A stretch of 64,000 bases of DNA, taken from contig NW_026262712.1 in the NCBI RefSeq assembly GCF_021869535.1, positions 78,988,001 through 79,052,000 on the forward strand, read 5' to 3'. Origin of the DNA: Mytilus californianus (taxonomy: Eukaryota). Below the pieces are notes generated by a model. The model was not told the origin of the DNA, ran no database searches, and saw only the letters and a list, made by a program, of their open reading frames with translations. Shown here one piece after another: positions 15,479 to 42,393 of the stretch; position 1 is the stretch's first letter; the number at the start of each line of letters is the position of its first letter. A program made the translations under genes and the position numbers.

Positions 15479-15647
15479 CCAATGCAATTGGGAATCAGCC
15501 ATGTGAAGGTGGCTGTAAGTGGAATATCTAAAGAATTGATTTGTGAAACACCCACCAGATAAGAATGGATATAGTCTATAAAAGCAGTGTAGTTTATTAA
15601 TTAAACTTGTTATTGCTACCTGGAATAATAGTGGACACCTGGTAAGA
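15479..15647 (+). promoter_or_regulatory. Pol II promoter plus short non-coding first exon, probably of buccalin
   Basis: CCAAT 15479-15483, inverted CCAAT (ATTGG) 15487-15491, E-box CATGTG about 15500, TATAAAAG 15577-15584, then a strong donor CTG|GTAAGA with the exon ending at 15641. Assignment to buccalin is inference. Confidence 0.55.
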
Positions 15648-17366
15648 ATTTTATATGCTTGTTTTCTCTTTTTAAATTAGAATATTTCCTAATTATTGAA
15701 CAAACAACGATTTAGTGGTGAAGGCATATACGCATAATTAAGCAATACATATAGTAAGGATTTTTAAAATTAATTTTCAATGTATGCAACAAAATAATAT
15801 AAGATGAAAGTATTATTACTGTTTTCATCTATCTGTAAATCATTGTTTGATTGCAACAGTTCTTCAACAATAATCATTTAGTTTACTGAAAGACATACAA
15901 TGAACAAAAGTAGCGATGTCAATTTGAAATAATTTTTCATTGATATATTTTTGATACATGTTAGATATAACAATAAATATTGATCAATGTTCATTATTGA
16001 TGAAAGCATTGAAAATTGTTAATAAATAGAAATTGCCGCAAACGAACAGTAATAATGAATTTAAATAAAAAGATAACAAACTTTTTAAAAATCGACACAA
16101 ATTCCAGCATACAACTTGTATTAGTTAACGTATGTATTTGGAAAAAAATACATAAAGTATTCTTTTAAATAGATCTAGTTCTTATGATTTTTATGAAATG
16201 TATGATACAAAAACCTTTATATCTATCGTTTAGAAGATATTTTTTAACTTCAATTTAAAAAAGTTCAAGTTCGATTGACAGATTATTGTTTTTCCACAAA
16301 TTATACCTTCTACAGTTAGCATATCAGACCAAAACTATTTTCAATAGTAAGGAAATCAGACCAAAACAACAAGTTTTACGAGTATGTGGGACTACTTGAA
16401 TTTTAGAGTATAATAATTATGTAAATACTTAACTGTATCGTTTCTTTTGTTGATAAGTATAATATTGTTGTCTTCAGTATTGAGCGCGTTTGGTTTTTAG
16501 ACAATAATGGCATAGAAATAAAGTTATCGTGTACTCGAAATAAACTTGATAAATTTTCTATCAACGTCAAAGAAATAGATGCATGTTTCATATACTTATG
16601 AAAGATTGAAGTGGATTATATCAAGACAGGCAGTTTAAATATGGAAATTTTGAAAATTTGAACAAATGTCAAAAACCATTGTTCAACAAGGCATACCAAA
16701 TTATTACTGAAATAATTCAGCATTTCTGGGAAAAAGTAAAAGCAAATGCCATAAAATGAATAACAAAACTACTTTCCATAAAATAATTTAACAACTCTTG
16801 TTTTTATTGCTGATGAGTACTAACACACAGCTTCACGTTGGAACCAGGTTGATCGTAAATCTGATTCTCTTCATATCTGCCCTTTGTGTCTATTTATCCA
16901 TTATTTATCACAAATACAGACCGTTGTGGTAGAATTGATGGTACAATAAGATTGTATTTGACAAGTAGATTCAGCAATGGGCGTCCCTGGTGCAGGTGGG
17001 TCCTGATGAGCGAATCGGACGTAAGAGGGTTTTTTTAGTATTGTTTCCATTTGTTTACGCTTGTATTTATATTTTACTCATTTTGTACTTTATTGAGAAG
17101 GTGTGTGAAATATATGGTATGTTCTATCAGCTACATTTGTTTTATCGGCGTCTTTGTCAATATGCTATCAACTACAAAGAACTTTTGTTGGCCTCTTTGT
17201 TAAGATTTATTTGTATGTTTGTTTGAATTTTTTAGCCAGTTTTCATGTATATTTACACAATTTGGCTGCTGGATCCCAATTGTTGTCACATTTACATATT
17301 AAGTCTGTTCGGGTTGCTCAATCAATTTTGTCAATATAACGTACGTTAATCAACGGAACTATGAAC

Positions 17367-17465
17367 AACTGTTATATAAGTGGAAGGTTTATCTAGTTAT
17401 AAAACTAGGTTTAACCCACCATTTTCTTCGTAAAATGTCTCTGCCAAGTAAGAAATATGGCAGTT
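17367..17465 (+). ncRNA. Decayed twister-like module, likely inactive
   Basis: P5 AACUGUUAUA/UAUGGCAGUU is kept, but the catalytic GA reads AA and P4 is disrupted. Confidence 0.6.
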
Positions 17466-23400: not shown

Positions 23401-23770
23401 GATGTAGTATTTTTTAGATTGAGGCAGGTCTAAAATAATTTACATTAGGTGAAATTGTTTCACATTATTTTCCCCTTGTGATCGATTTACCAGCTTTAAT
23501 ACCGTTTATTAAGTTAACAGCTTCCTTCCTGTCATCTTTGAATCGGATATTGTGGTAGCGGGTCTATGAGTCTACACGCCAACCAATCTAAGATGTTGCT
23601 TTCATTGCGTCTCAAATATCAACGAAGAATGAAAAGGATTTAAGCTTACATTACTTGAAAATTTGCCTCCATTAAGATAACTTAACAACATCAAATGTGA
23701 CATAAATATGGTAAATAAATTAACATGTACGTAACTTACAAACGAATCCAACCTTGGGAAAGTAGGGGGG

Positions 23771-24480
23771 AAAAGTAAAACAACAAAATTACCGAACTCC
23801 AAGGAAAATTCAAAACCGAAAGTCCCTAATCAAATTGCAAAATCAAAAACTTAAACACATCAAACGAATGGAAAAACACTTGTCATATTCCTGACTTGGT
23901 ACAGACATTTCCTTATGTAGAAAATGGTGGATAAAACCTGGTTTGATAGCTAGTTAAACACTCTCGCATTGAATTCCATTATATTGACAACAATGTGTGA
24001 GCAAATTAAACTTTAAGACATAATAGATAAAAATGTGAAAATTTGGGGTACAGCAGTCACAGTTGTGTTATAATCTTAATCACTATAAAAAACCCAACTA
24101 TGTCAACAAATAAAAACAAAATTGCATATAGAAACTCTATAAACAAAGCACATAAGCAAAAATGAAAGACAAAAATACATACAAAAAATGACCATAGCAC
24201 AATAACCAATAACACTATGGCGGGATGTATGAATACATAGCCACGCTAAAAGGATATTACCAAAAATAGACTAAACAGTAAAGTATAAAAATGTACAAAG
24301 ACAAATAAAAAGAACACTATAACACGTAATTAAGATGATAAACAACGATAGTACTTAGAATCTATACTTCCAAGACCATTATCTATTATTTGTGAAGTTG
24401 ATACAGAATATTTATCAACAAGGTCTTGGCATCATCCGATGTAGTTTGTTAGAGGGGTTTAAAGACAGACATCTTTTTAC
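23771..24480 (-). mobile_element. PLE family 2 3' end: RT C-terminus, 3' UTR and twister module
   Basis: The reverse complement of 24290-24470 aligns with 10450-10620; it continues into the ACC/GGU twister module (23881-23968) and the ttttgttgttttactttt terminus. Confidence 0.85.
23881..23968 (-). ncRNA. Decayed twister-like module in the PLE family 2 3' UTR
   Basis: L4 UACCAAGU, P4 UCUG/CAGG and P3 are present; the cleavage-site UAA reads UUA, T1 is disrupted and the 5' P5 arm is missing. Confidence 0.6.
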
Positions 24481-26295
24481 CTGTCTTCTTAACTTCGTTT
24501 TTGCATAAATGTTATTAACAAGCCAAAATTGTATCTAAGGAAATACAGTGAACATGTATTGTTCCAAAAGCAAAGTTTATGCTGAATCTCGACAATTAGG
24601 GAGACGGGCGATTCTCAGACAGTTGAATGGTACGCTGTACCTGATAGCTATTTGCATTTAGAAACTTTCGTCTATTACCGTCATATCTGAACTGTTAAGA
24701 AAAAGCCCGAGGTAGTTTTTGTCACTATATATGCAGATATATAATTTGATGATATATGACATGATAAATTTAATGTCTGTACTATTCAGAGTTTGGAAAC
24801 TCAAAGAGAAGTAATGTTATCTAAATTGTTTATGTTCTTATGATTTTTGTATTGTCATTCTTATAAGTCGGAGGGGTTAATTATCTTTTAGAGATACGAT
24901 GTAGTGTTGCCAAACTTTCTACATTTTCTTTTATTTACACGAAGGAACAAAAATCAATTGAGGAGGAAATCCAATTATTCATGGCAAGCAGGTAACAAGT
25001 GCTTTTGGATGTCTTGAGGGTATTCAATTACACAGACATATCTGGACATATTCAAAACAATCATTAACAAAAAAACTTAATTATGAAAAATATATGGATA
25101 TTTCTGGTGCGGATTTCCATAGTTACAAGGAATGGCCAAAGAACATATCCCAGATGTAATACATTATTAAGTCAGCAGATCCATGGAACACAAGGCTAAT
25201 TATATTGGTTAAATTGACAATTAATTTATCTGACGGAGATTATATTAACCTTTGCATTTTCCGTGGTTATGTTATCGTTTTGAGTATAAATCTTCAACAT
25301 GTTTTCTTTTCAAAAACGATGTATCCAAGACAGTATTCTATAAATTTAAATAACATTATCTATCTACATATAACTAATATATCATGTAACGGAAGAGCTG
25401 TAAGACCTAAGTTAATACGAATATATATATATTAGATTGTAGATTGGTTGTTTTTAGTAACTATAATCGTTCTCTGATGTAAAATTGCTGATTAGTGTTT
25501 TAGTTATCTATTATACCAGTATTGTAGATTTAGTGTTTTCATTCACTTATAATTATTTTAATGTACTGAATATACCTTGTTGTTATTTTAGTGGTCGAGA
25601 TTCAAAGGGGGAAAGTTGAGATCTCTCAAAAAATGAATGTTCATGTAACTTTCAAAAGTCATAAACCTCGTCGGAGATTGTCTTTTGTTAAATCTTAATG
25701 TTTTTTTTTCATTTCGGAGAATTTCGCCAAAATGGTATATTTATGAAAGTCCCACGTGTTTTTAATAAAAAGAAGCCAATTGCTAAATTTATGAAACTGC
25801 TTCAATTAGCTTGTGATTGCGTCAGTAAACCTCGAAAACTGCAAATTATATTTAGAACAATCTGTTAAAATGTCTTCACACATGTATGTCATATTATTTG
25901 GATGTCCGGCATTAAATCAAAGCCGTTAAGTTATTGTCATGATAACGTAATAATTATTGATGTTTTGCAGATACATTGTTTTAAATTACTTCGTTTTATA
26001 AGACGTGTTTCAACAGTGTATTCAAATTTGGCATTATAGTTGAAATCAATATGTGTTCCTCTCATTCTACGCAGTATTCATTTATTTAAAACAAAATTAC
26101 ACGAAGATGATTATATGTCTTTAAATAATCTAGATCCACTACTATTTAAAACTAACGATATCCTGAAAATGATCCTCACCAGCTTTACGAATTACTTTCT
26201 TCCTGGGCATTTAAAAGAATTAATAAAAGGAATTGTGGGGAGTGGCTGACTAAGACAACATTTGTTTGATACTAATGAAGTTACAGCAGCGCACA

Positions 26296-27310
26296 AATAA
26301 AATTGAGTATGGAAATGGGGAATGTGTCAAAGAGACAACAACCCGACCATAGAGCAGACAACAGCCGAAGGCCACCAATGGGTCTTCAATGCAGCTAGAA
26401 ACTCCCGCACCCGGAGGCGTCCTTTAGCTGGCCCCTAAACAAATATGTATACTAGTTGAGTGATAATGGACGTCATACTAAACTCCAAATTATACACAGG
26501 AAACTAAAATTAAAAATGAAACAAGACTAACAAAGGCCAGAGGCTACTGACCTGGGACTGGCGCAAAAATGCGGCGGGGTTAAACATGTTTTTTGAGATC
26601 TCAACCCTCCCCCTATACCTCTAGCCAAAAAATGTAGAAAAAAAAACCGCACAACAGTACGCACAGTAAAACTCAGTATAAGAGAAGTCCAAGTCCGATG
26701 TCAGAATGGGAAACAAAAGAAAATAAACAAAATGACAATAATACATAAATAACAACAGACTACTAGCAGTTACTGACATGCCAGCTCCAGACCTCAATTA
26801 AACTGTTTGAAAGATTATGTCTTCATCATATGAATATCAGGCATAATCCCTCCTGTTAGGGGTTTAGTATTATACCGTCATAAAATATATGAGAAGAACA
26901 TAACCCGTGTCATGCTAACAACTAGTTTTAAAATAAATGTGTTTAGTTCAGATGCAAAGACCCTATAAGTGAATCAATATTAAAGCCAAAATATGCAATC
27001 TTTAATGACCTGACAACAATATCCCTTCTTAATAAGTCTGTTTAAAGGTTTATTAGCTTTTGAGGTGAATACTGACATTTTTGTGCTTTGTAAAGTATAT
27101 TACCATAAAAGATTGGATGTGAAATACCCGAACGTATAAGATGTCTGCATGTTGAGTTATATTTACGAATGATGTCCTTATACCGATGATAAAATTTAGT
27201 AAATGTTTTGACTAGTTTATGGTATTGAAAATTCTGGTGTAATAATTTTTCAGTAATACATAAATTTCTCTTGCTGAAATTCAATACGTTGTTACATACA
27301 CGAGCGAATA
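26296..27310 (-). mobile_element. Second, shorter 5'-truncated copy of PLE family 1
   Basis: Closely similar to 48837-49860: RT C-terminus (NLCITEKLLHQNFQYHKLVKTFTKFYHRYK) plus the full 3' UTR, same 3' end (aataaaattgag on +). Confidence 0.9.
26535..26626 (-). ncRNA. Type P5 twister-like ribozyme in the second family 1 copy (P4/L4 mutated)
   Basis: Same fold as 49071-49162; T1 CCC/GGG intact, L4 UCCCAGGU, P4 CCAG/CAGU weakened. Confidence 0.7.
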
Positions 27311-29674
27311 TACTTTTAATAAACTACTGAAACGTTTGAATTTTGTCAATGTTTAACCATAATAAAATACTATCATCAAGTTTTTTTTTAAAATATAAAT
27401 GTATTTACAAATGTAATTTGAAATTCAGTGTCCCTGTTCCTTGGAGACTATTATATATGCTGGTTTTCTTTTTTTTTTTTTATAAAATTTTCAGATATCG
27501 AAATCTATTTTGGTGACTCACTATTCAGACAGAACACGTTTTATGCGATATAGAAAGTGTGACCTGTATTTGTCTCCCTCTTAGGCTAAAATAGAATTCG
27601 TTAACAATACATTGGTCTTCTGTATATTTTAGGATAAACATGCAATTTGGCCCTTACCGAACTAACTCCTTTAAGACATCATATCTTCTGAATTTTTTTT
27701 ATGCACAAAATGACAGCAGCAAATACGTATAACAAAATTAATGAATATTTCTGACTTCCATTCTTGAAAACTTGTCATATTTCATTTTATCGTTGTGAAT
27801 CTTGAAGACATGTTCAATATTTGTACATTTATTGCCAGAACTGATGCATTTTGTAAAGTGAAATCTCATGTCACCACTGAGTGATGTATATTGTGTCACC
27901 ACGTAAATAATAATTAATGCAATTAACCTTTATCTTAAATAATTACATAATTAATGGCTAAATTTCTCTATCTTAGGATATGGAGAAAATGGCATTATTT
28001 TCAAGCTATTCTGAGGTGATAATTATTTTGATAAAACGATGGCATTTAAGAGGAAGCGTTAATGGAAGAACGATTGTTGTGATCCACGGAGATACTGATG
28101 ATCCCGTGGTTCTTTATCTAACATGCTTCTACAAATATGAACCAAAACAGTTGGAAACTGATTTGAAAGATCGCCATGAAATGCGTATTTGCCTTTTGTT
28201 TTTCAAGATAGATTAAAGAAGGGTTAAAATCGTTAACTGATAATTTAAACATGTAACTTAAAAGTAAATGTCAACATCGGCAAAATGTACGTGTCTCATT
28301 AAAATAACCTTAGATATATTTTGTTTATAAGAAGAAAGATTATAACATTGTATGTTACAGTAATCAAATGTATTAAGTTTAAAGCAAACCTGAATCTGAC
28401 AATATCAGGTTTGAATTATTGCTAGAAATCCATTATGTAATCACAAATAATATTTTACCGATGTAATATTCATCATTCTACATTCAAATTGCAATTCTGT
28501 TATAAGAGAAGTCAACTGGTCTTTAATTTGAAAAGCTTCCAGATGTCTTTATGGTATAGCCTGTTTTCTTTTAAATATTGAATTAATTTTATATTAAATA
28601 AACTGTGTTGACGTGCAACAAAAACTACATATATCCTAAGATAGGGAAAATCGCTTTTCTTTGGGTGATTTCACATCACGTACTAATAAAATACTTGTTA
28701 ATGAAATTAAATCTCAAACAAATGAGGTTCAATATAATAACATAAAAAATTGTTCAAAGGATATTTAAAGCTTCTCAATTTTTTCTTTATAATCGGATAT
28801 ATGTTGTTTTACGATTTTTCAATTGACATAAGTATGCATTTCCATATAGTCATATACATTCACTGAAAATTGCCGGCGAAATTGATGTTTAATGTTGCAC
28901 GTATTTTGTTGGCTCAATCTGTAAAAGCTATGTCAGTGGGAATTATCACGAGTCCAACAATGACATAAGACAAGAGTCACCTTTATCATTAGTCTGGTTA
29001 TAAAACAACACACATACAACGATCTAAGCAATACTAATTATCTGTACACGACATGGGACCAAGATAAGGCAATTGAAATACTAAAGACCACCAGATTAAA
29101 AACAATTCATTTTATTTGACGGTATTCCATTATATTGTCTGCAGCCATGAACGAAAACTGATCCAAACATTTATGTATTTAATATTAATATATTCAATAT
29201 CTTTGAAATAAAGTTGATATTTAGAATATAATTGAACATACAGCATTTGTAGTATGCAATATTTGTTCCTTTTGCAAGTTTGCATGTGGTCCAATCGTCA
29301 CACGAATTTCCATGTTGACAAGTATGTAGAATTGTATTCCTACCAAAGAGATTTGTTTCATATTGTAGAAGCAAGCATGTCAACTTTAAGATTAGCATTA
29401 ATTGAATCATAAATATATTCCATTATTGAATGCTGGTACAATTAACTTTCTTCTAGTATTAGAAGCGTCAGGGGGCTTGACATAAACTGTTCAGTTCTTC
29501 TACCTTAAGGCATTTGCATGAGTTAATTTGTGTTGACGTTATGTAAACATATCAATAAATTATTAATAAAATAATTTTCGGGAGATCTTAAACGATTTCC
29601 CAGACGTAGTTCGTGTATGTAAAAGTGTGTTATTTCATCACCTGTATATATAAGGTATCCTTTATTAATAATTG

Positions 29675-29852
29675 GTTATCAACGGTACCAGGATTATAAT
29701 TTATTACGCCAGACGCGCGTTTCGTCTTCACAAGACTCATCAGTGACGCTCAGATCTAAATAGTTATAAAGCCAAACAAATACAAAGTTGAAAAGCATTG
29801 AAGACCCAAAATTCTAAAAAGTTGTGCCAAATACGACTAAGGTAATCTATAT
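29675..29852 (-). mobile_element. Hammerhead-bearing retrozyme-like repeat
   Basis: Shared flanks gttatcaa.ggtaccagg and gcattga.gacccaaaatt with copies at 14.4, 35.6 and 52.9 kb. Confidence 0.7.
29707..29748 (-). ncRNA. Minimal type I hammerhead ribozyme, intact
   Basis: CGUCA-CUGAUGA-GUCUU(GUG)AAGAC-GAAA-CGCGCG-UC^-UGGCG; stem II differs from the 52965 copy but still pairs. Confidence 0.9.
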
Positions 29853-30509
29853 TCGATAGTAGTTTGTTTGTGTGTTTAAAAGTGTGTTATTTCATCACCT
29901 GTATATATATGGTATCCTTTATTAATGATATTTGACAGTAGTTTGCCAATGTTTAACTGTCGTTATATTGAAACCAGATTTTAAAAAAGTAGGTGAATCG
30001 CTTCTACCCAAAACGTAGTAAGACCAAGAGCTTTGGCAGGTTAAGCAAGTTCTTCCTAAAATCGTGTAAGTGTAATATGCAATGTACAATTAATCGTTTA
30101 CTTAAAATAACTCTATGTATATTTGATTTAAAATATCAGAGCGTTTATGTATGTGTTATTACATATTTCTAAGTTTCCTGCAATGATCAACATTCCAATT
30201 AAATGAACAATATACGCTCATTGTCAGAAAATCTTAAATTAAATGAACAAACTTTAAAAACAGAAAGACATCATTTTATATCCATTACAACAATATATAT
30301 ATATAAATATTAAATATTACCATTCGATCATAAAAGAAGGGGGCTACCAGAGAACTATAAGCGAATATCGCGTAACATTATTTGTATAGTGATATGGCTA
30401 ATAACAGTTTTCTTAACGTTTGTTTGGTTTTTCTATCGTCAATGTTTAGTATTCATACCTTAGAGATCAAATATAAACACTCCTTAACTTTATGCGGAAC
30501 TATTATGAT

Positions 30510-30760
30510 CCACTTTAGAACAGTTTACGACAAAATATGGTCTTCCCTAGAAAACTTTTAGCTGAGATAACTATTAGACACCAAGATTCGGTCAATTCTA
30601 CTCGAGAACATTTTGAATAGTGTTTCATTAGAAAAGATTGTGACATCTTTCCGCCTAGAACAGATAGTTCTACTCTAGAGCAGATCTTGACAGTTCCATC
30701 ATAGAACAGTTTTGGAAAATTCTACCCTAGAACAGTATCTGACATTTCTATGTTCTCGAG
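30510..30760. repeat. Degenerate short tandem repeat (ct..tagaacag motif)
   Basis: About eight recurrences of cct/cat-agaacag-like motifs at roughly 30-bp spacing. Confidence 0.45.
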
Positions 30761-33700
30761 ATAAAAGTACATTAAACATGTAAAAGCGACAGTATAATTC
30801 ACTGATGTTTAATCGATTAGGAGACAAATCAAGGCAACACATAAAAACTGAGATAATCGCCGGAACTTCAAAAGGGGGAGACCAGGTGAGTTAAGCAGTT
30901 ATATAACGCATTATTCTGACGGCAGTTCTGTTAAAGCTTAATTTAACTGTACACACGACCAACGACATTCGGTTTACTAAAGCATGTTTTGATGGAGTAT
31001 CAGATCAATGGTTGATTAAATTTTACAGAAAGTCTTGAATTAACCCAGTAGAAAAGTATCTGGATGTGCAGAATTATCACAGTTATATCTTTAAAAAAAT
31101 TATGACTTTATGAACAACAATGATTCACTTCCTTGAGCCATCAGAGTGTCCATTTTAAGCATATTCTAGTGTAGAAGAATATAATACAGAATATCAAATG
31201 AGACAGATTCTTTTTCATCCAAAGGGATACCTGTGTTGGGACAAATCTTGTTAGCTTGGATGCAACACACATACCATAACCTGTACGGATTAGTCACTTC
31301 CGTGTTGAGGATGCATCTACACACAATATTAAAAATGAAGTGCAAGACTGATCTAATGACATCTTAATTTTTTATCATAAAAAGACTACTACAGAACATA
31401 ACAACCAATATTTTGTCTGTACCAAGTCAGCACTGTAACAGTTGTTTTCCATTCGTTCGGTTCATTGATAACACCCAACGTTCGATCTTGTCAGTTTTTA
31501 TGGATTTCCCCTTTATGAATTTACATTGGAGTTCGGTATTTTTGTTATAATTTTTGACTGAATGTATCATGAGCAACTGTTGTTTTAGTGACTGCGAGGC
31601 TGTGTATACATAAAAGCCAGATTTATGCTGGTTTGTTCTTTTCTTGGCTAGGCAAAACAGGCTGTAAAATAGAAGAATACCGAGGGGCGCTTAAAATCAC
31701 AAATCAAAGGAAAAACAGACATCATGATTAAAAGAAAGAAAGGAGTAAAAGACAAAAAAGCTTATCACAAAAAGCTCATTGAAGAGAAGTAGACATGAAA
31801 TATTCAATACTTAATGCCCTTTTTGGTTGTATCAAAGAAGTATTATTTTGACATCAATATAATACTTATATTGTTGTATCTACTATCATTTTATCTGTTA
31901 CTTTTTTGTCCATATTTTTTCTGAAAACAAAATCAACAAAAGCATATCGAGCTTTACTGTATTTTATATTTGATATCTACATAAACCAAGAATATATAAA
32001 GAGCACATTAGTTATAGGGATTTAATCGACGTTTTACAAAAGCCTTTTCGTATAGTATATAAATAATACCTTCACAATAACTGTGAAAATATAATTAACC
32101 ATTTGATATTTTGTTGTTTACTTACTATACTGTGTGTCTATTGTGTCGCATGGTTTATTTTCTTATTAACATTTATATCATAAGAGTATGTTTACTGACA
32201 AAAAAAAGCTTCAAATAAAATGAAGGATTTCAGTACATCCATTGTAAAAAATGTTGTCCATTTGAATACGGAAATACCAATAATCTAAATTAAATGGTAG
32301 TAGATGATATCTAAATCAACACCATTTAATAAAGGCGTTTTAATTTTCGTATGTCCGCAGATGGCTTCAGCGACGGAATAAAGAGTTGTTCTTTGAATCT
32401 GAAAGTGTCCTTAAGGAATCTGGTTCTTTAAAAGTTAATTAAAAACAAGACTCGGAATCTTCACGAAAGTTTAACACTATAAGGCGTCACTAATAAACCT
32501 TGTTTATAACGCAACATTTACCAAAATAATTATACAGAAGTTACCATTGAGAGTTTTCCACGTCAGAAGGCTAATCTTTAACTAATCTGTTGTTTTGCTA
32601 ACTGTATATTGATCTAATGACATCGCATACAAACATCAGACATTTAATTGTTTTACGACCATGTAATTACCAACCAAGAAGCGAAATTAATATCATAAAG
32701 AAAACTTGAAAATTTATAAATTGTTTTTAAACATTTTACCGCAGGTGATAAGGACATGTATAATCTAATACTCAAAATATAAAAATTCCCCCAATACAAT
32801 TATAAAGTAATTTGCAAAGGTTTTATAAATTGTTACGTAGTGCTCAGTTATTTGTCAAGACTGGTTTGTTGCACATTACATTTCTCGTTGCAATGATATA
32901 ATAATAAGGTTGGTACGTTGATAAGAATGAATGGTGATCTAGCCTTTGTAATGACCCTTATCGATAGAAGAAATAGTGATCCTGTCTTTGTAATGACCCT
33001 GCTCATTAGAAGAAATAGTGCAAGATTTAATCTGCTGTTATGTTTTTTTCCCTGAAACTGCATAACATGGCATGTAAAACTGGTTTGCACTTTTAGAGAC
33101 TCGCTAACGAAATTTTGATGAGGTTATGATGTTCATTTTTGGTATGAACAAGCATCCTTGAAAATAATAAGTAAATAAAAATTCAAAATTTGTCGTTATT
33201 TACACTGTATCATTTTCTTATTTGCATTAAACTTATTAAAATTTCAGAGGTAAGTGCGTCAGACGTGTTTTTGACGTCATCTTAATGTTTGACCTTTTCG
33301 TAAACTTAGAAAAAGCAACTGGAATCGATGGGTTTGCTCTTTGTTGAAGGTCATGTGGCGGCCTGTAGTTGTCACATCCTTGTATTTTGGTCTTTGATAG
33401 ATAATTGTCTCATTGGCAATCATACCACATCTCATTGTTTTCATAGTAATGCCTCGAAATGACAAAATATTAATATAAACATTTTTTCATTAAAAAGGTT
33501 TGATGTAAACTAAAAGCAACTATTACAGACAACAGCAACCACTAGATTACAGACTTCTTGTTAAGGGTTCATTAGTTTTTGAAACGGCTTATTACAGTTA
33601 TATCAGTAAAGGACCTTCACTTCAGGTTTAGTTCCTAACTACCCGGGAAGTTTGCTGTTGTCCTGTTTTATATGCTAATCGTGGAGTTTCACACTTGACC

Positions 33701-35158
33701 GACCTGTTAACTGTTGACACATCTTATAGTCAGTCCACGAGATTTAATAGTAAATTTGTATTTTACGTGTCTGTAATGTATGCAGTTTGATATTTAGCCT
33801 GGTAGCTGAGCATTTATCTCCTAGAGTGGTGAAATCATACATGTATAGTTTTCTATTTGTCCATATCTTGATTGGCTTATTTTTTCCTTGTAATGTGTAT
33901 TCCCCTACCTGCAATGTATTGTCCTTTACAAAGGACGCTTTAACTAAAACGGCATGTATTGCCTCCATTAACGTTAATTAATGATTAGCTGACAAACGTT
34001 TTGAGAAGTTGCATGACAATCTATCCAAACGGGAATTAAATGGATCTCATATTTCAATGAAAAGATGACAATCAACAATTTGAATCTTAAACAAAATCCA
34101 TTAAGCTTGAAGTTTCCGATTAGTGAACAATTAATAGATAATTGTCCGAGGTCTCATACTGCAATTTACGCAATGATCACAAAAGCTTGACTAATCCGAT
34201 TTTAATATTTGGTTTTTTTCCTTGAACAATTGAAAAGTACCTTACATCAATCTGACTGAATCCTTAAAAAATAAAATGAATAACTCGTCAACGTAGCAAA
34301 CAACCAAACATGATAGAAATCACTATGAAATAGGAGTGTCTAATCATAAGACTGATTTCAAGTTGAATTAGTAACATAAGACAATGTTGTAGATATACAT
34401 GTACAAAGTGAATAATAATTTCACAAGGATTGTCAGTATATCATGTTAAATATTAAGGATGATAGGCTCTTAGCAGTTCGGTATTAAAATATCAAATAAA
34501 AAGCATCAGGCATTTACACCATTTACCTTAGGTGCTTACATCATTGCCTAATGGAATATTATGTCAAATTAAAAGAAAGGATAACGCGCCTACACGGCAT
34601 TACGGTTTGATTTTACAAGATGCAGTTGGACGCTTAAAAACCAATCATATAATCTGTCGTTATTTAATGGCAAATAACAAATAAATGGAGAATGTGTTCA
34701 TGGGACAGATGATGCCCCGCTTGGATATAGCGTTATAAAGGGACATAACTAGAGAACTGTATAAAACTGGAAACCTCTATCGTCGGTGATGCATATATAG
34801 TAGGAGACGCTTACCCTGTCGACCTAGGCACTCGGTCATTAAACTTTACTCAGTACTCAAGAGTACAAAACATGTACACGAAAAACAAAATCCGGTAATT
34901 TGACTGGTTGATTTCTGAGTCTAAGTACAATAATCGTGCTCAAAATTTGTATTACCGCAGGACCCGGTCTCGCTCCTTTGCGAGTTAATGCGAGTTCTTA
35001 ATTTCTATTTGTTTTCTCGATTTGCTAGATTTGTACGTCTGTAATCTACTGTCGCCTTAATAAAGACTCTTTAGCTCTCTCAAAACACCTTAGTCGGTGT
35101 CGAAACAATCATATCACCTGCTACTTTAGCAAAACGATGTTTTGTTTGAAGATACTAT

Positions 35159-35550
35159 TTAAATAAAGACAACAGTAGTATACCGCTGTTAAAAATTCAT
35201 AAATCGATTGAGAAAAAAACAAATCCGGGCTACAAACTAAAACTGAGGGAAACACAAAAAATATAAGAGGAGAACACAGACACAACAGACACACTAAAAT
35301 GCAACACACACAGAAACGAACTATAAGATAACGATAGCAATTTTCCTGACTTGGTACAGGACATTTAAGAAAAAATGGTGGGTTGAACCTGGTTTTGTGG
35401 CTAGCCAAACCTCCCGCTTTAATGGCAATGTTAAATATAACACTAAAATGACAACATCACATGACAGGACTACAATACAAATATATAGAAGAACATACAG
35501 GACAGAGAAACTCACAAATAAACAATACAATAGAACATTACGACAAGCTA
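35159..35550 (-). mobile_element. Twister-bearing non-autonomous element (aaataaagacaacagtagtata terminus)
   Basis: Homologous to 43473-44030. Confidence 0.75.
35335..35430 (-). ncRNA. Type P5 twister-like ribozyme (ACC/GGU subfamily), core intact, P5 decayed
   Basis: GCGG-GA-GGU-UUGGCUAGCCACAAAACCAGGUU-CAA-CCC-ACC-P3-G-UCCUG-UACCAAGU-CAGGA. Confidence 0.7.
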
Positions 35551-35554
35551 ATAG

Positions 35555-35765
35555 TTATCAAAGGTGCCAGGCCTAAAGAGGAAGAGCATTGATGACCCAA
35601 AATTCCAAAAAATTGTGCCAAATACGGCTAGGTTATCTGCCTGGGATAAGAAAATATTTAGTATTTAGAATAATTCATTATTTTTGCAAACAGCAAATTT
35701 ATAAAATATAAAAATGACCATATAATTGATATACATGCTAACACCGAAGTGGTGACTAACTACAT
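35555..35765 (-). mobile_element. Retrozyme-like repeat with the hammerhead segment deleted
   Basis: gttatcaaaggtgccagg is joined almost directly to gaagagcattgatgacccaaaatt; about 90 nt including the HHR are missing relative to 29.7 kb. Confidence 0.65.
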
Positions 35766-36937
35766 AATAAAAACGAATACGTAAAACATACTAGATCAGC
35801 ACTTAAAAACAGCACAGCCGAACAACGCATTGTATGTAAGCCGAATAGATCGACGCACAAAAGTGACGTCACAGGTAAATTTCTAAAAAAATCCAAAAAA
35901 TAGGATAGAGTTCAAGATTAGATTTGTAATACTGATATTACATGTATTTAATGACAATGAAAATTACAATACTTATTAATATAAAATTGTGTTAGTATAG
36001 GCAACAAATAATAAAGGGAAATTCAAACTCATAAGTCGAAAATAAACTGACAACGCCATTGCTAAAAAAAAACCAACAGACAAACAATGTAAGGTTATGT
36101 AAAATAACTATTACACCGCAGAATATAGATAGAATCTTATCTGTAATTTAAAAATATATGATCAAAATAGTCAGATATCCAAGGATGTGATACATATAAT
36201 ACCATGGAATAATATCGAACATTTTGAAAGTTCTCTCTAAATATTCCTTACTTAGTGTCCTTATCCTCCTTCCTCCCGAATGAAACATAAGGATAACCAC
36301 GCGTTTGTTTCATTCTTTTCCATTCATTGCCACAAGCTGAGCTTGCCCCTAGATGCAGCTGATTTCTTGTAGCTTGGTCGTAACAGTTCTTCTTCTGGTG
36401 GTACGGTGGTACGAGGTCAACCTGGTTTTCTCTTTCCAGTAGAGAAATATTCTGAACATGTTAAAATTTCTCTCTATATATATGGAAATTACAGTTTGTA
36501 GAATATTGGGTAATATTTTAAACTCTGAATTTAAGGAAATATTGATATAAGCGGTGGTTGTATTTAACATTAACATTGCTTTTGAGTTCACTTACCAGAC
36601 CAGAAAAATGGACATATAAACCCATCTCAACGGTGTATATTCGAAATCATCAGTACAGTCTCGATGTCATGTTTACAACAATCTTTTTCTCACCGTTGTA
36701 TGAGAACAATATGTACAATGTTTTAATGTTGATAGACATATTTGATGAACATCCGTTACATGTCAGATCGACCTTTCCTTTCTGTATCATATGCTTAATG
36801 AAATATATGTAAATGGACATGAATTTGTTAGTTGAAATAACGGAAATCATTTCCCTTGTCAGTCATTCTCTGTAAAAGAGAAGAAAGAAATCATGTAATA
36901 AATATGACTTTTTCAGTGAAAAAGATCGATGAAACAT

Positions 36938-37232
36938 TATGTACCCCTATTTGTGACATTTTTACCTATTATGTCTGTTTGTTTTGTTCACACAATGTTG
37001 CCAATATAAGGGAGTTTTATGCGACTGTCATACAAGTGAGAGGTTTAGCTAGCTATAAAACAAGGTTTAATCCACCATTTTCTACATAAAGAAATGCCTG
37101 TACCAAGCCAGGAATGTGACAGTTGTTTTCCATTCGTGTGATGTGTTTAAGTTTTTGATTTTGCAATTTGATAAGGGACTTTCCGATTTGAATTTTCCTT
37201 GGAGTTTGGTATTTTTGTTATTTTACTTTTAA
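36938..37232 (+). mobile_element. PLE family 2 3'-UTR fragment with twister
   Basis: Reverse complement of 23771-24060; related fragments at about 17330-17570, 31415-31555, 48160-48240 and 51505-51641. Confidence 0.8.
37024..37123 (+). ncRNA. Type P5 twister-like ribozyme (ACC/GGU subfamily), near intact
   Basis: P5 ACUGUCAUA/UGUGACAGU, GUGA-GA-GGU, U^AA (37068/37069), UCC-ACC, P3 AUUU..AAAU, G, P4 CCUG/CAGG, L4 UACCAAGC. T1 is ACC/GGU; one T2 pair is A.C. Confidence 0.75.
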
Positions 37233-39300
37233 CTAAGTTATCGAAATAAGCAAAATCCGCTGCAATATACATCTAAATACTGTAAACATGATATTCAATT
37301 TACCAATCCATGTTATATTAATTGTAAAAACTGCATTGCTATATTCGTATGGGAGCCAGTCTTAATCGCCAACTTTTTTATCAGGGGCATTTCAATGTTA
37401 CACTTTGTAAGATTAACTCCCCTGTTGTTTTAATTACATTTGATCGTCGTTTTTTAATAAATGGCATTTTGGTTGGCATCTTTCTCCTTAATAGTTTGCC
37501 TTCAAACAACAGAGCAAGGTGTGTACTGACATAACTACTCATGGACTAAGGGGATATGTAATCATATGGTGGTATTCTGTTTGTTTTTTTCTGTGATTCT
37601 CATCTTAGATATACATTTACAACACTGGGCAAGTCAGACATAATTATGTGTCTGTCAGCGAGATTTGACTCCATAGGTTTTTTAAAGTCTTTTGCAAAAC
37701 CCAAATGACCATCGAACCAAAAAAAAAACAAGCTACAACGAAACCATTGAGGTATTTCTAAAATAAAGACGACATAAAAATATAAAAGTAATTCTAATTT
37801 GTACATAGATAAATATTATCTCTACATGTAGATATTTATTCTATTGACTTCCTGTTTGTTCTTTGGTATTTCATATTTCTTTAAAATTCAACCAGAAGAG
37901 TAAACTAATTGTTTCTTGTATTGTGAAGACCCTATTACCCCTTGTCTTTTTCCCCTGGGATATTTCAACAGAATATAATTGAAAAAAAAACGCATAGGAA
38001 TCCTTTAATACGGGAATAAATTATAGTTGACATTTAAATCCGTCCATAAAGTATCAGTATCACATATTTTAATATTTACAGTCTATTACACTTCATTAAC
38101 ACCATAAATAACAATAAAAATAAAAAAGCTTCAAGATTTTAACTATTTATCAAAAATCGTTTTGAACTGGAATCCCTTTGCCTATCTTAAAATTTAGCTT
38201 AATGTTTCATTGAAAAGTAAATTGATTATAAAATAGGATTTAATGTTGTGTTCTAGAGTTATTGTTTCCCACAACGCAAACTGATCAATGTAAATCAGAC
38301 ACCATTCAAACAAAAAAGACATAAAACATTCAACACTCAACCATTGTCTTTAATCAATTGTACAACTCATTCAGATGAATGATAATAGTTGTATCGGTAT
38401 AAACATAATTGATATAAAGTTGGTATATTCATAAAATATGGAAATTTGTTATTAAAACTTGTGAATAGGGTATCAAAAATCTGTACATAAAATATGATAT
38501 ATAAAACGATAAGCAACTACTTGGTGATTTATAATTTATGACAAACTTTGTATAATTTCCAAATGCATTCTCATATTCAATTGCTAATGATGCTTAATTG
38601 TTTTTATCATATTTTGAAATTAAAATTCACCAATAATTTTTATTAAAATGAGTAATTCTATAGATATATTCAAGCAGTTACGGTGCATTGCGTGATGCAA
38701 GTGTAGAATGTATCAAATGACATTAACAAATATGCGTTTGTGTATGAATAGGTTAAACGCTTATATTGTATTGAGAGCACTCGATGAAATAGTGAAATAT
38801 CGCAAGCCATGATCAATCAAAACAACAGTTAATATCATATCATATATGAAGAAACAAACAACATGTTTTTTTCTGATAATCAAATATCCGAGTTTTAGAT
38901 GAGTATCTTTCAATGTTATTTAATGTATACTTTTTAAAGGGTAGCATCACTCATACATCACGTTTTGTTTACATCAATCATCCATTGGAACTAACCTGTA
39001 TCGTGAATTGCCATTTAGGATTTATTTAGATATATTTTCTGTACTTCTATAATCAATACATATTTATAGCAACATTGTTACTAAGATTAATAACAGAAAC
39101 ACACAATGTCCCGCTATGCCTACGATGAATTATCGCCAAAAGTCAAAGAAAGCTAGAAAGTAACATTTTCTGTTACATCAAGCAATATTAATTACCCAAA
39201 AGACAATTGATAGATATGTATTTTTCATCTCTATGTTATATCAGATAGGCAGATCAAAACTCAGTTGACAATACTAATCAATATTTAAATTACAAAACAT

Positions 39301-40183
39301 GGTGTTTCACAAAGCTGTCTTAGGACTAAAACATGTCTTAGGATGGTCTTACGGCATATCTTAGTCCTAAGTGGGTTCCACAAATTGGTCCTAACTTAGG
39401 ACATCTTTCAAACTTGGTCATAAGGTTAGTACTACACGAGAGGTGTCTTATGATGGTCTTGGAATAGCCATCAGTTAAAAAACAAATATAAATTACACTT
39501 ATTTTTATATTAATTTTGCAAATTCTAATCTCCTTTTTCTGCTCATAACTAAATCTTTATAGGTTGACGGATTATGAAACTGATTTATCAACAATTAACG
39601 TTCGATTTATTTATAGCAATAATGCACGATTTTATCCTTTAACTTTATTATAACCGAAACAGTGACAAATTGAATTCAACTCACTTGTACAAAAAAAAAA
39701 TGTCATTATTTGATTTTATTTTTTTCAATTTTGTATTGAATTTATATATTGGTGTATTATTAATAGATTATTTATATAAATTACAGTTACTTTTTATATT
39801 AATTTTGCAAAATATTTAATTATGGAATATTACTCAATACGTTTTAGTAATTTATGGGAAACACATACTATATTTACATGAATTTTTCCATACATATTAT
39901 ATTAATTTTGCAAATTATCTAAATATTGAATATTAATCAATACGGTCCAGTAATTTATGGTAAACACATACTATCTTTACATGAATTTTTCCATAAATCC
40001 ATGTTAATATTTAAAAATTTAAAGAACTTGCGACAGGTTTAGGATATTTTTGCTATGATCATCCTAAGACACCTTCAAGGCGAGGTCTGAGATATGTCTT
40101 AAGATAGTCTTAAGAGGATCATAAGACATGTCCTAAGATACATCTTATGACAGGTCTTAGAATAGGTTCGTTAAAATGGCCCC
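39301..40183. mobile_element. Fold-back/MITE-like element with about 160-bp diverged inverted arms rich in cttag/ctaag motifs
   Basis: catgtcttaggatggtctta (left) vs taagaggatcataagacatg (right), and aggtgtcttatgatggtc vs gatcatcctaagacacct. The interior has a 103-bp tandem duplication (about 39825-40000). Confidence 0.55.
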
Positions 40184-41017
40184 TGGTGTCCACAATTAAA
40201 ATTTTGATTTTCAATACAATTCCCTTGAACCAGTTCAATATATATCCTGTTTTTTTCTAACGTAGGTTCTTCTTTCAAATATTAGTATATATCATTACTC
40301 TACATTTTTTTTATATATTTTGAGAACATAATAGGCTTGTTCATAAGGTAGTTGATTGTAGATTATTCTTCTATTTTAAGAATTATCATGGTCTTCAATC
40401 AACTTTAAACAGATTATTTTATACTCCTTCTTATATATTAAAAGTAAACTTTGAAGTCGTATCGTCTTGCTAATTGATTTTCTTTTTTGTATATGCATCT
40501 TTATGACCATGACCTATGGTGTTTGACCCAAAACTGTTATGTTTATATTTCAAAGTATAATTATATTTCCTTGTTTTATCCTTAAAAATCATCTTACCAA
40601 AGATAAAAGTGAACGTATTGTTCTTTTCCTTTTTTGACGTTGACAGAACCGAGCCATATTCAAAACTATCGTATAGTGTAACACTACTTTTGGACGATAT
40701 ACTAACATAACTATAGTGCATTATCTGAATAACGATTTCGGAGTAGCGTGACAGGAAGAACATACGAGTTGTATTCTTTTAAACATTGGCATCTATTCCA
40801 TGACAACTGAATTATTAACAGTATGTATGTGGGTAAACAATGAATTTTTCAAGTCACACATATAGGAAAAATATTAAGGTAGATATTTTACACTACAAAC
40901 TAATATTAAATTTAGAAAAAAAAACGACCGGATTACATAAATAATATATCACACACAAGCCGAAAAAAGATAGATAAACACTATGAAAAACAAAAACGAA
41001 ACACGTATTAACAACAT

Positions 41018-41120
41018 AGATATAAGAAGATGTGGTATGAGTGCCAATGAGACAACTCTCCATCCATGTCACAATTTGTAAAAGTAAACCATTATAGGTC
41101 AAAGTACGGCCTTCAACAGT
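41018..41120 (-). mobile_element. Short family 4 3'-end fragment, 165 nt upstream of the buccalin acceptor
   Basis: Near identical to 45625-45720. Confidence 0.8.
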
Positions 41121-41264
41121 CCACATACACTGCACATAAATCCAGATTAAGCAATATATCCTGCACAAAAACAGAGGTGCCCTAAACATATTAATTTGCT
41201 CATGTTCAACAAGTTGACGTTTTAGTTAAAACACTTATTATCATGATTATCTACTGTTATTTTG

Positions 41265-41325
41265 CAAATTCTTTTTCTTTGTAGATTGAAGAAGTAAAAT
41301 AACAGACGGGAAAAAGAACAATATA
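41265..41325 (+). other. Splice acceptor and 5' UTR portion of the buccalin coding exon
   Basis: Polypyrimidine tract ttctttttctttgtag with AG at 41283-41284; the exon starts at 41285, 41 nt before the ATG. Confidence 0.75.
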
Positions 41326-42120
41326 ATGGTGTCAAATGTACAATTGCGTTATGTTGCTTCAGCAGTAATATACTTAATACTTTTATGCAACGAACTTGTT
41401 TGTCAAGAAAGCACTGAACTGTCAAAAGATGATGAATTATTACAATACAAAAGAAAAATGGATATGTATCGATTCCATGGAGCATTAGGTAAACGACAGA
41501 ATGAACAACCGATTCCTGAAGATCAGTTTGAAAAAAGAAAAATAGACTACGCCAGGTTTTTAGGTTCTCTAGGAAAGCGCGCAACTTTTGACGATAGCTA
41601 TCCAGAAGTAGAACGAAGATCTAAATATGATAGATTTATGTTCTCACCAAGCTTAGGTAAACGATATGTAGATCCACAAGAATCCATTGAAGCAGATAAA
41701 CGACGTCTTGACCGCTTCTCGTACTTTGGCAATCTTGGGAAAAGAGGAATGGATAAGCTGTCATATTTTGGAAGTCTAGGGAAACGTGGCCTTGACAGAC
41801 TATCTTTCTTTGGAGGGCTTGGGAAAAGAAGGCTTGATAGACTGTCATACTTTGGAGGGCTTGGTAAAAGAAGTGGAGATACGGATGAAAGGTATAATAA
41901 TATTGACAGTGCTGACAATTACAATTTGTATGATGTAAATGATATTTTGCCTGCGCGCGAAACTAGATCATGGTACTGGACAAATAGAGGTACAAAGCGG
42001 TTACCAGTTTCAATCAGGGGCATTGATAAATATTCACTGTTCGGTTCACTTGGTAAAAGAAGCATAGATCAAGAACGACTTCAAGAAATTTTAGGAAAAA
42101 GATTATTATCTAGTGTGTAA
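41326..42120 (+). CDS. buccalin: Buccalin / allatostatin-A type neuropeptide precursor (264 aa)
   Basis: Hydrophobic N-terminal signal peptide (about aa 1-26), then nine L-G-KR amidation/cleavage sites releasing KMDMYRFHGALa, KIDYARFLGSLa, SKYDRFMFSPSLa, RLDRFSYFGNLa, GMDKLSYFGSLa, GLDRLSFFGGLa, RLDRLSYFGGLa, (LPVSIR)GIDKYSLFGSLa and SIDQERLQEILa. The pattern matches Aplysia buccalin A (GMDSLAFSGGLa). Four peptides lie in 42-bp tandem units at 41704-41871. Confidence 0.95.
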   Translation: MVSNVQLRYVASAVIYLILLCNELVCQESTELSKDDELLQYKRKMDMYRFHGALGKRQNEQPIPEDQFEKRKIDYARFLGSLGKRATFDDSYPEVERRSKYDRFMFSPSLGKRYVDPQESIEADKRRLDRFSYFGNLGKRGMDKLSYFGSLGKRGLDRLSFFGGLGKRRLDRLSYFGGLGKRSGDTDERYNNIDSADNYNLYDVNDILPARETRSWYWTNRGTKRLPVSIRGIDKYSLFGSLGKRSIDQERLQEILGKRLLSSV

Positions 42121-42393
42121 GTCAAGGACACCGCATGTAACCCTTACTTTACCCTTTCCTCTCATTTAACCTTGCATGTTTCTTTACTGAGCTGTACGTT
42201 TCCATTTTATTGTTAATTTAGCGCTTGATATAAACGCTAATATATGGCCACAAGCATGTTTTATTAAACTATAATTGAATGATTACCTTGAAATCTAATT
42301 GCATATACCTTTATATATCTAATTAAACACATAATTTCAATCTTTGATTATATATGCATTAATACCTGCTATCCTGTGGTTATCCAGAGTAAA

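What the first reader, a model, noticed from the sequence alone, without database searches (positions are those of the whole stretch)
37024..37123. Near-intact sense-strand twister inside the predicted buccalin intron
Seen: this copy is on the + strand about 4.2 kb upstream of the 41284 acceptor and keeps the catalytic GA, UAA, T1, P4 and P5, with one A.C mismatch in T2. The other sense copies in the intron are crippled (17367: catalytic G lost; 31415: 5' half missing). Inference: if exon 1 is at 15.6 kb, co-transcriptional cleavage at 37068/37069 could modulate neuropeptide pre-mRNA splicing or abundance, comparable to the intronic CPEB3 ribozyme.
Basis: inference. Interest (0 to 1): 0.7.

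Follow-up and report, generated by a model that had tools for sequence, protein, structure and literature searches.

The report
Retroelement twister relic in buccalin intron
A well-preserved copy of a twister-like self-cutting RNA motif does sit, in the sense direction, inside the first intron of the California mussel's buccalin-like neuropeptide gene, but it is the leftover tail of a jumping gene that sister species lack, so a regulatory role is unlikely.

Summary
Window 37024-37123 (+) carries a circularly permuted (P5-open) twister-like motif. It is the best-preserved copy in the window: 97.5 bits against a covariance model built only from non-window relatives.

The gene model also holds. 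The window is Mytilus californianus. A spliced RNA contig from a related mussel joins 15599-15641 directly to 41285 onward. Intron 1 is therefore 15642-41284, and the motif lies in it, in sense, 4.2 kb before the acceptor.

The motif is part of a 5'-truncated tail (about 36940-37240) of a Naiad-type Penelope-like retroelement. This subfamily departs from canonical twisters in four ways:
- no P1 hairpin;
- a 3-nt P2 strand instead of 4;
- AC instead of GC for pseudoknot T2;
- no Rfam gathering-score hit.

This copy also breaks T2 (A.C), the only one of 12 relatives to do so.

It is not conserved. An M. edulis-complex ortholog lacks the insertion. M. coruscus keeps the repeat's first 90 bp but has lost the ribozyme core.

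Self-cleavage is untested, and a CPEB3-like regulatory role is unsupported. Earlier notes of this scan had already reported twister motifs in Naiad tails on other DNA of this genome.

The parts
36940..37240 (+). 5'-truncated 3' tail of a Naiad-type Penelope-like retroelement (subfamily A repeat)
   Evidence: BLAST within the window finds copies at 17283-17557, 24052-23771, 31414-31548, 35427-35343, 43612-43525 and 51641-51493 (alignment). Collinearity with the M. edulis-complex contig L075 breaks at about 36935, next to the repeat's start.
37024..37032 (+). P5, 5' strand (pairs with 37115-37123)
   Evidence: 9 bp. Pairing probability is 0.7-1.0, also with 200-nt flanks on each side. 5 of 9 pairs show compensatory changes among 12 relatives.
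37033..37039 (+). L2 3' strand (CAA) and P2 3' strand (GUGA)
   Evidence: A39-U71 and G38-C72 pair. Pair 39-71 covaries (G-C in 8, A-U in 2). G36-C73 pairs in 11 of 12 relatives, against 7 of 12 for U37-A74.
37040..37044 (+). L1 3' strand: catalytic-position G37040, A37041, and the T1 3' strand GGU
   Evidence: Direct reading. These columns are invariant in A4. GGU pairs with ACC at 37102-37104.
37045..37067 (+). Linker in place of the P1 hairpin: 10-nt palindrome at 37046-37055 and a degraded second palindrome at 37059-37067
   Evidence: Direct reading. Position 37062 is A where 9 of 11 relatives have C. No hairpin abuts both T1 and the UAA.
37068..37070 (+). L1 5' strand UAA; predicted scissile bond between 37068 and 37069
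   Evidence: Assigned by position relative to P2 and T1, as in published twisters (table in PMC8501958). Cleavage itself was not tested.
37071..37075 (+). P2 5' strand (UCC, 3 nt) and T2 5' strand (AC)
   Evidence: Canonical twisters have 4 nt plus GC here. The 5-nt form is shared by all 12 subfamily-A relatives.
37076..37096 (+). P3 hairpin (6 bp)
   Evidence: Aligned as a stem by the Rfam twister-P1 model and by model R1.
37097..37112 (+). P4 (CCUG/CAGG) with loop L4 (UACCAAGC): T1 5' strand at 37102-37104, T2 3' strand at 37107-37108
   Evidence: Pairing probability is above 0.9. C37108 replaces a U present in 11 of 11 relatives, giving an A.C mismatch in T2.
37115..37123 (+). P5, 3' strand
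   Evidence: See the P5 5' strand. G37116 replaces an A present in 11 of 11 relatives, giving a U.G wobble.
15599..15641 (+). Exon 1 (5' UTR) of the buccalin-like gene, as far as the RNA contig reaches; TATAAAAG lies at 15577-15584
   Evidence: L077 nt 1-43 match at 100% identity. The sequence reads CTG|GTAAGA at 15641/15642.
15642..41284 (+). Intron 1 (25.6 kb) of the buccalin-like gene
   Evidence: The junction in spliced contig L077. A polypyrimidine tract and AG end at 41284.
41285..42120 (+). Exon 2 with the buccalin-like ORF (ATG at 41326; read-through ORF of 264 aa)
   Evidence: The first 262 residues are 100% identical to XP_052065586.1 of M. californianus.

Best explanation
The stretch is a relic of a retrotransposon, not a host regulatory element.

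Origin. A Naiad-type Penelope-like element of subfamily A inserted a 5'-truncated copy of its 3' tail (about 36940-37240) into intron 1 of the buccalin-like gene, in the sense orientation. This happened before M. californianus and M. coruscus split, and after or apart from the M. edulis-complex lineage.

What the tail carries. It holds the family's built-in P5-open twister-like module. That module most likely serves the retroelement's own RNA, for example by processing tandem or read-through transcripts, as proposed for the hammerheads of other Penelope-like elements. That role is inferred, not shown.

State of this copy. All nested helices, the catalytic G-A, the UAA and T1 survive. T2 has lost its A-U pair (A.C), and the second linker palindrome is damaged.

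Likely behaviour. If it cleaves at all, it would cut the nascent intron between 37068 and 37069 slowly and as a by-product. The host gene does not depend on it.
For: Shown:
- The stretch belongs to a repeat family with at least 7 copies in the window.
- Relatives sit beside Naiad ORFs. In L062 the motif lies 409 nt upstream of a 1004-aa ORF with an N-terminal GIY-YIG domain and an RT. In L079 it lies 156 nt downstream of the stop codon of a homologous ORF.
- The fold is supported by pair counts on 12 relatives: 86.7% of cells paired against 29-42% when partners are slid, and 8 pairs with double changes.
- T1 shows two different compensatory variants, read directly from the sequences: ACC/GGU in this subfamily, CCU/AGG in the copy at 45879-45971, and CCC/GGG in canonical twisters.
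- The gene model comes from spliced contig L077.
- The insertion is absent from the M. edulis-complex ortholog L075.
- The core (37029-37434) is missing from M. coruscus L080, which keeps 36940-37028.
- The T2 mismatch is unique to this copy among the 12.

Inferred:
- the module's role in the retroelement's life cycle;
- weak or no cleavage by this copy.
Against: - This copy is the best scoring in the window and departs from strongly conserved columns at only 3 of 52 positions. One of the three is compensated and one is a wobble. Residual activity is therefore plausible.
- P1 is dispensable for twister cleavage in vitro (PMC5408937).
- An A.C opposition can be tolerated as a protonated wobble.
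- Lack of conservation rules out an ancient function, but not a lineage-specific effect on expression in M. californianus.
Confidence: 0.75

Rival explanations
1. This copy is an active twister that cuts the buccalin-like pre-mRNA co-transcriptionally within intron 1. It would thereby tune splicing or abundance of the neuropeptide mRNA, in the manner of the intronic CPEB3 ribozyme.
For: - The copy is in sense, is intronic, and lies 4.2 kb before the acceptor.
- All nested helices, the G-A, the UAA and T1 are intact, and it scores best in the window.
- For CPEB3, the ribozyme's half-life matches the polymerase's transit time to the next exon, and blocking the ribozyme raises the mRNA (PMC10919898, abstract).
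Against: - T2 is broken in this copy alone.
- The family's P2 is one nucleotide short, and the review warns that changes in P2 length may disturb the active site.
- There is no P1 hairpin.
- Rfam does not recognise the motif.
- The insertion is absent from the M. edulis-complex ortholog, and the core is deleted in M. coruscus. CPEB3's ribozyme, by contrast, is known to be conserved across mammals.
- Intron 1 holds further copies on both strands with no sign of orientation bias.
Confidence: 0.1
2. The subfamily-A module is not catalytic at all. It would be a structured 3'-tail element, for example a recognition site for the element's reverse transcriptase, descended from or converging on a twister. 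In that case no copy cleaves.
For: - The P2 5' strand has 3 nt and T2 uses AC/GU in all 12 relatives.
- The P1 hairpin is replaced by palindromes.
- Rfam gives 18.4 bits against a gathering score of 67.2.
- Nearest-neighbour folding does not predict P2.
- No cleavage data exist in the papers searched.
Against: - The nucleotides that matter for twister catalysis are invariant across elements whose ORFs are only about 58% identical. These are the G-A, the A after the scissile bond, and the L4 core.
- T1 covaries.
- Sister subfamilies in the same window keep the canonical 4-bp P2 and GC (copies at 49066-49166 and 45879-45971).
Confidence: 0.15

Closest known systems
Twister ribozyme, type P5 permutation (Roth et al. 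2014; Rfam clan CL00120; review PMC5408937)
   Same: - The order of elements is the same when opened at P5.
- The UAA cleavage loop, the G-A in the L1 3' strand, and a 3-bp T1 are present.
- P4 includes its extra G-C pair, L4 has the U...AAG pattern, and the optional P3 is present.
   Different: - There is no P1 hairpin; a 23-nt linker with palindromes takes its place.
- The P2 5' strand has 3 nt, not 4.
- T2 uses AC/GU instead of GC/GC, and is mismatched in this copy.
- The motif scores far below Rfam's gathering threshold.
- Cleavage has not been shown.
Twister variants at the 5' end of the Perere-3 (RTE) non-LTR retrotransposon of Schistosoma mansoni (PMC8501958)
   Same: A twister-class motif is built into a retrotransposon and copied in large numbers. 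Its proposed role is processing of the element's own RNA.
   Different: [quoted passage not shown]
- This motif is P5-open, lies in the 3' tail of a Penelope-like element, and is untested.
Hammerhead ribozymes in the pseudo-LTRs of canonical Penelope-like elements (Cervera and de la Pena 2014; PMC8557442)
   Same: A small self-cleaving motif sits in the terminal repeat or tail of a Penelope-like element. Minimal forms are thought to act as dimers.
   Different: - The ribozyme class differs.
- Naiads were reported to lack canonical hammerheads.
- No paper in the searched library links twisters with Penelope-like elements.
CPEB3 ribozyme, an HDV-like ribozyme in an intron of a neuronal gene (PMC10919898)
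   Same: A self-cleaving motif lies in sense within an intron of a gene expressed in the nervous system, upstream of the next exon.
   Different: - CPEB3's ribozyme is a single-copy, conserved host element with measured kinetics and a measured effect on expression.
- This one is a lineage-specific retrotransposon fragment that sister species lack or have deleted, with no activity data.

Membership tests
Twister ribozyme (Rfam twister-P1/P3/P5) | Reaches the Rfam gathering score | tested here: not met
   There is no hit at gathering. The best is twister-P1 at 18.4 bits against 67.2, E 0.56, covering only P3 and P4.
Twister ribozyme (Rfam twister-P1/P3/P5) | N-A scissile dinucleotide in an L1 loop reading UAA, next to P2 | tested here: met
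   UAA at 37068-37070, directly 5' of the P2 strand. Relatives have UAA or CAA.
Twister ribozyme (Rfam twister-P1/P3/P5) | Conserved G and A in the L1 3' strand (general base position) | tested here: met
   G37040 and A37041. The A column and the T1 G-G-U columns are invariant in A4. The G column is G in 10 of 12 relatives, with A in 17364-17469 and L019.
Twister ribozyme (Rfam twister-P1/P3/P5) | Pseudoknot T1 of three Watson-Crick pairs between L4 and L1 | tested here: met
   GGU (37042-44) pairs with ACC (37102-04), and 94% of cells pair across the relatives. Subfamilies differ by compensatory changes: ACC/GGU, CCU/AGG and CCC/GGG.
Twister ribozyme (Rfam twister-P1/P3/P5) | Pseudoknot T2 formed by the conserved GC of L2 with GC of L4 | tested here: not met
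   The family uses AC with GU. This copy has AC with GC, so A74.C108 is mismatched and only C75-G107 remains.
Twister ribozyme (Rfam twister-P1/P3/P5) | P2 of four Watson-Crick pairs | tested here: not met
   Only 3 nt (UCC) lie between the UAA and the T2 dinucleotide. There are two Watson-Crick pairs plus either C.U or a slipped C73-G36.
Twister ribozyme (Rfam twister-P1/P3/P5) | P4 with the extra G-C pair, and L4 with the U...A pair | tested here: met
   CCUG/CAGG, G37100-C37109, with U37101 and A37106 in place.
Twister ribozyme (Rfam twister-P1/P3/P5) | P1 stem next to the cleavage site | tested here: not met
   No hairpin abuts both T1 and the UAA. The linker holds palindromes instead. P1 is dispensable in vitro.
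Twister ribozyme (Rfam twister-P1/P3/P5) | Site-specific self-cleavage | not testable with these tools
   This needs an in vitro or in vivo assay.
Naiad Penelope-like element (PMC8557442) | ORF with an N-terminal GIY-YIG endonuclease and a C-terminal RT, adjacent to the tail | tested here: inconclusive
   Met for relatives. The L062 ORF of 1004 aa has GIY-YIG at residues 135-223 (22.6 bits, equal to the cut-off) and RT at 750-853. The L079 ORF has the motif 156 nt downstream of its stop. The focal copy itself has no ORF upstream, because it is a 5'-truncated tail.
Naiad Penelope-like element (PMC8557442) | Lacks a canonical hammerhead in the tail or pseudo-LTR | tested here: met
   Rfam finds no hammerhead in 36700-37500. 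The two near-threshold hammerheads in the window lie elsewhere.
Conserved intronic regulatory ribozyme (CPEB3 type) | Sense orientation within an intron of the host gene | tested here: met
   The spliced contig L077 defines intron 1 as 15642-41284.
Conserved intronic regulatory ribozyme (CPEB3 type) | Conserved at the orthologous site in related species | tested here: not met
   The insertion is absent from L075 of the M. edulis complex. The core is deleted in M. coruscus L080.

The most novel reading that the evidence does not exclude
The copy is still a working, though slowed, twister. Having arisen only in the M. californianus/M. coruscus lineage and survived only in M. californianus, it would cut intron 1 of the buccalin-like pre-mRNA and lower or time neuropeptide output in that species. 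That would be a naturally occurring, species-specific, retrotransposon-donated intronic ribozyme switch, with sister species as built-in knock-out controls.
Probability: 0.08. Interest if true: 0.65.

Novelty: new variant of a known kind. Interest (0 to 1): 0.38.

Why it matters
At the family level, a twister-class module built into the tails of Naiad Penelope-like elements would matter. This group was published as lacking ribozymes. It would suggest that all Penelope-like elements need some self-cleaving RNA, and it would add a P1-less, short-P2 twister variant to test.

For this copy, the value is practical. It is a well-preserved natural copy with a single T2 defect, placed in a verified intron of a named neuropeptide gene. 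Sister species lack the core (M. coruscus) or the whole insertion (M. edulis complex). That makes it a convenient natural test bed for whether such relics cleave host pre-mRNAs.

As a claim of neuropeptide regulation, it is weak.

Tried and rejected
- Rfam at gathering and at permissive E-values, for the whole window and for sub-regions. It gave only a partial twister-P1 match and nothing for the other twister-like copies.
- A metagenome scan with a 19-nt pattern. Of 64 loci, 55 were chance hits in bacterial contigs and 9 were true relatives.
- An exact look-up of the window's 264-aa ORF. It is not on record, so homologues had to be found first.
- Logan contigs L065-L075. I hoped they were transcripts, but they are genomic. 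Only L077 is spliced.
- Two home-made regular-expression descriptors. They were too noisy or too strict, and I replaced them with a covariance model.
- One consensus structure for all subfamilies on a MAFFT alignment (A3). I rejected it because subfamilies A and B differ by a 1-nt register shift in P2/T2 and in the position of the G-A.
- A P2 model with a bulged C on the 5' strand and no T2. It is less well supported (pair U37-A74 in 7 of 12) than the model with T2 and G36-C73 (11 of 12).
- tblastn with the L062 Naiad ORF. It found no RT remnant upstream of the focal copy or at 24100-24480. There I saw only a short motif resemblance by eye.
- Chance resemblance, rejected on the E-value and the covariation.
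Exon 2 was searched by reference alone, and the joined step was left out.
- No contig looked human.

Full report
**1. What is at 37024-37123**

The stretch reads as a twister opened at P5:
- P5: 37024-32 pairs with 37115-23.
- L2 3' strand: CAA.
- P2 3' strand: GUGA (37036-39).
- G37040-A37041, then GGU (37042-44).
- A 23-nt linker.
- UAA (37068-70), then UCC (37071-73) and AC (37074-75).
- P3 hairpin: 37076-96.
- P4: CCUG/CAGG, enclosing L4 (UACCAAGC).
- AA, then the P5 3' strand.

I took the layout of published twisters from the table in PMC8501958 and the review PMC5408937. Against that layout, the following are in place:
- the G-A;
- the A after the scissile bond;
- T1 (GGU with ACC);
- the extra G-C pair of P4;
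- the U...A pair of L4.

Rfam does not recognise the stretch. There is nothing at gathering. Twister-P1 reaches only 18.4 bits against 67.2, over P3 and P4 alone.

**2. It is one copy of a repeat**

BLAST of 36500-37700 against the window finds a repeat of about 300 bp (36940-37240). Other copies lie at 17283-17557 (+), 24052-23771 (-), 31414-31548 (+), 35427-35343 (-), 43612-43525 (-) and 51641-51493 (-).

A metagenome scan with a conserved 19-mer returned nine true relatives in marine contigs, among many chance bacterial hits.

I built a covariance model from eight relatives outside the window (A5, R1). Its scores in the window:

| Copy | Strand | Bits | Note |
|---|---|---|---|
| 37020-37128 (focal) | + | 97.5 | no non-canonical nested pair |
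| 35329-35433 | - | 95 | |
| 43527-43632 | - | 88 | |
| 17364-17469 | + | 84.8 | |
| 23874-23983 | - | 60.8 | |
| 45879-45971, 49066-49166, 26530-26630 | - | 33-41 | a second subfamily |

- 17364-17469 has A at the catalytic G position and a broken P4.
- 31381-31447 is a 3' half.

**3. Is the fold real?**

On 12 subfamily-A sequences (A4), 86.7% of cells pair. That compares with 29-42% when partners are slid. Eight pairs show changes on both sides, five of them in P5. The first P2 pair covaries (G-C in 8, A-U in 2).

T1 shows two independent compensatory variants, read directly from the sequences:
- ACC/GGU in this subfamily;
- CCU/AGG in the 45879-45971 copy;
- CCC/GGG in canonical twisters.

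The motif's core is nearly invariant between elements whose ORFs share only about 58% identity.

ViennaRNA predicts P5 and P4 with probability above 0.9, also with 200-nt flanks. It does not predict P2.

**4. Where the family and this copy depart from the twister**

All subfamily-A members have 5 nt between the UAA and P3, where twisters have 6 (a 4-nt P2 strand plus GC).
- The counts favour a 3-nt P2 strand followed by an AC that forms T2 with the GU of L4.
  - A74-U108 pairs in 11 of 12.
  - C75-G107 pairs in 11 of 12.
  - G36-C73 pairs in 11 of 12.
- The alternative, which uses AC inside P2, is weaker: U37-A74 pairs in only 7 of 12.
- The review notes that changing the length of P2 may disturb the active site.

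There is no P1 hairpin. The linker carries a perfect 10-nt palindrome (37046-55) and a second, degraded one. P1 is dispensable in vitro.

The second subfamily in the window keeps the canonical 4-bp P2 and GC.

The focal copy departs from columns conserved in at least 10 of 11 relatives at three places:
- 37071 is U, compensated by A37039.
- 37116 gives a U.G wobble in P5.
- 37108 is C where all 11 relatives have U. This turns the T2 A-U pair into A.C.

So "near-intact" is fair relative to the family. The family itself is a non-canonical variant whose activity is untested.

**5. Parent element**

- In L062 the motif (1277-1385) lies 409 nt upstream of a 1004-aa ORF on the same strand. That ORF has an N-terminal GIY-YIG domain and a C-terminal RT. 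This fits the tandem pseudo-LTR arrangement.
- In L079 the motif lies 156 nt downstream of the stop of a homologous ORF.
- An N-terminal endonuclease with a C-terminal RT is the Naiad/Chlamys architecture. Naiads dominate bivalve genomes and were reported to lack canonical hammerheads (PMC8557442).
- No paper in the searched library links twisters with Penelope-like elements.
- Earlier notes of this scan had already reported twister motifs in Naiad tails elsewhere in this genome. I used them as leads and re-derived the link for this subfamily.
- The focal copy has no ORF upstream. It is a 5'-truncated tail.

**6. Gene context**

- The ORF at 41326-42120 encodes a precursor with repeated F-G-x-L-G-K-R units.
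- Its first 262 residues are identical to XP_052065586.1, "buccalin-like", of Mytilus californianus.
- A Logan RNA contig, L077, encodes the 191-aa spliced isoform.
  - Its nt 1-43 equal window 15599-15641 at 100% identity.
  - It then continues at 41284/41285, and later jumps from 41892 to 44471.
- A TATAAAAG at 15577-84, a GTAAGA donor at 15642 and a pyrimidine-tract AG acceptor at 41284 fit this.
- Intron 1 is therefore 15642-41284. The motif is in it, in sense, 4215 nt before the acceptor.
- One caveat: the transcript comes from a related species. RefSeq also lists pairs of transcripts with the same protein, so alternative first exons may exist.

**7. Conservation**

- Genomic contigs of an M. 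edulis-complex mussel are collinear with the window up to about 36935 and again from about 37700. They have 213 bp of unrelated sequence in between.
- The M. coruscus ortholog (L080) keeps 36940-37028 of the repeat, then resumes at 37435. The ribozyme core and the rest of the tail are gone.
- The copies at 35329-35433 and 43527-43632 lie in blocks absent from M. coruscus, so the subfamily was active recently.
- Exon 1 and the splice junction are conserved without the motif.

This argues against a selected host function, unlike the CPEB3 ribozyme (PMC10919898).

**8. Verdict**

The observation and the gene model are right. The regulatory reading is not supported. The stretch is a well-preserved retroelement relic that may or may not cleave.

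That step was left out.

Noticed in passing
window 52964-53007 (+) and 29706-29749 (-): Two type I hammerhead matches fall just under Rfam's gathering score (33.0 and 32.6 bits against 34). They probably belong to canonical Penelope-like elements or retrozymes. The second lies in buccalin intron 1, antisense.
   Followed up: no
window 26827-26891 (-) and 49360-49424 (-): Two SECIS matches fall just under gathering (33.3 and 32.2 bits against 35). Each lies about 200 nt upstream, in the element's sense, of a subfamily-B twister-like copy (26530-26630 and 49066-49166). This fits the selenoprotein-coding Naiads described for clams.
   Followed up: partly
L077:1043-1133 (3' UTR of the spliced buccalin-like transcript of a related Mytilus): The transcript's 3' UTR holds another sense copy of the same repeat that has lost P3 and P4 (R1 score 34.9 bits). 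M. californianus has no copy at the matching place, so the family also inserted into this gene independently in the other lineage.
   Followed up: partly
window 35163-35996 and 43472-44041: Blocks holding the twister-like copies at 35329-35433 and 43527-43632 are absent from the M. coruscus ortholog L080. These are young, M. californianus-specific insertions.
   Followed up: partly
window 37046-37055 and matching columns of alignment A4: The first linker palindrome changes sequence between subfamilies but stays self-complementary (for example UAGCUAGCUA, UGGCAUGCCA, UGGCUAGCCA, GGCGCC, GUGCAC). This suggests selection for self-pairing or for a palindromic binding site.
   Followed up: partly
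window 41892/41893 and 44471: An internal donor within the buccalin-like ORF is spliced to 44471 in L077. This gives the 191-aa isoform, which drops several predicted peptide copies.
   Followed up: partly
window 144-227 (+): A further weak hit of model R1 (23.5 bits, E about 8e-4), not examined.
   Followed up: no
window 47272-48130: A long tandem array, seen as many staggered self-matches when the window is compared with M. coruscus L080.
   Followed up: no
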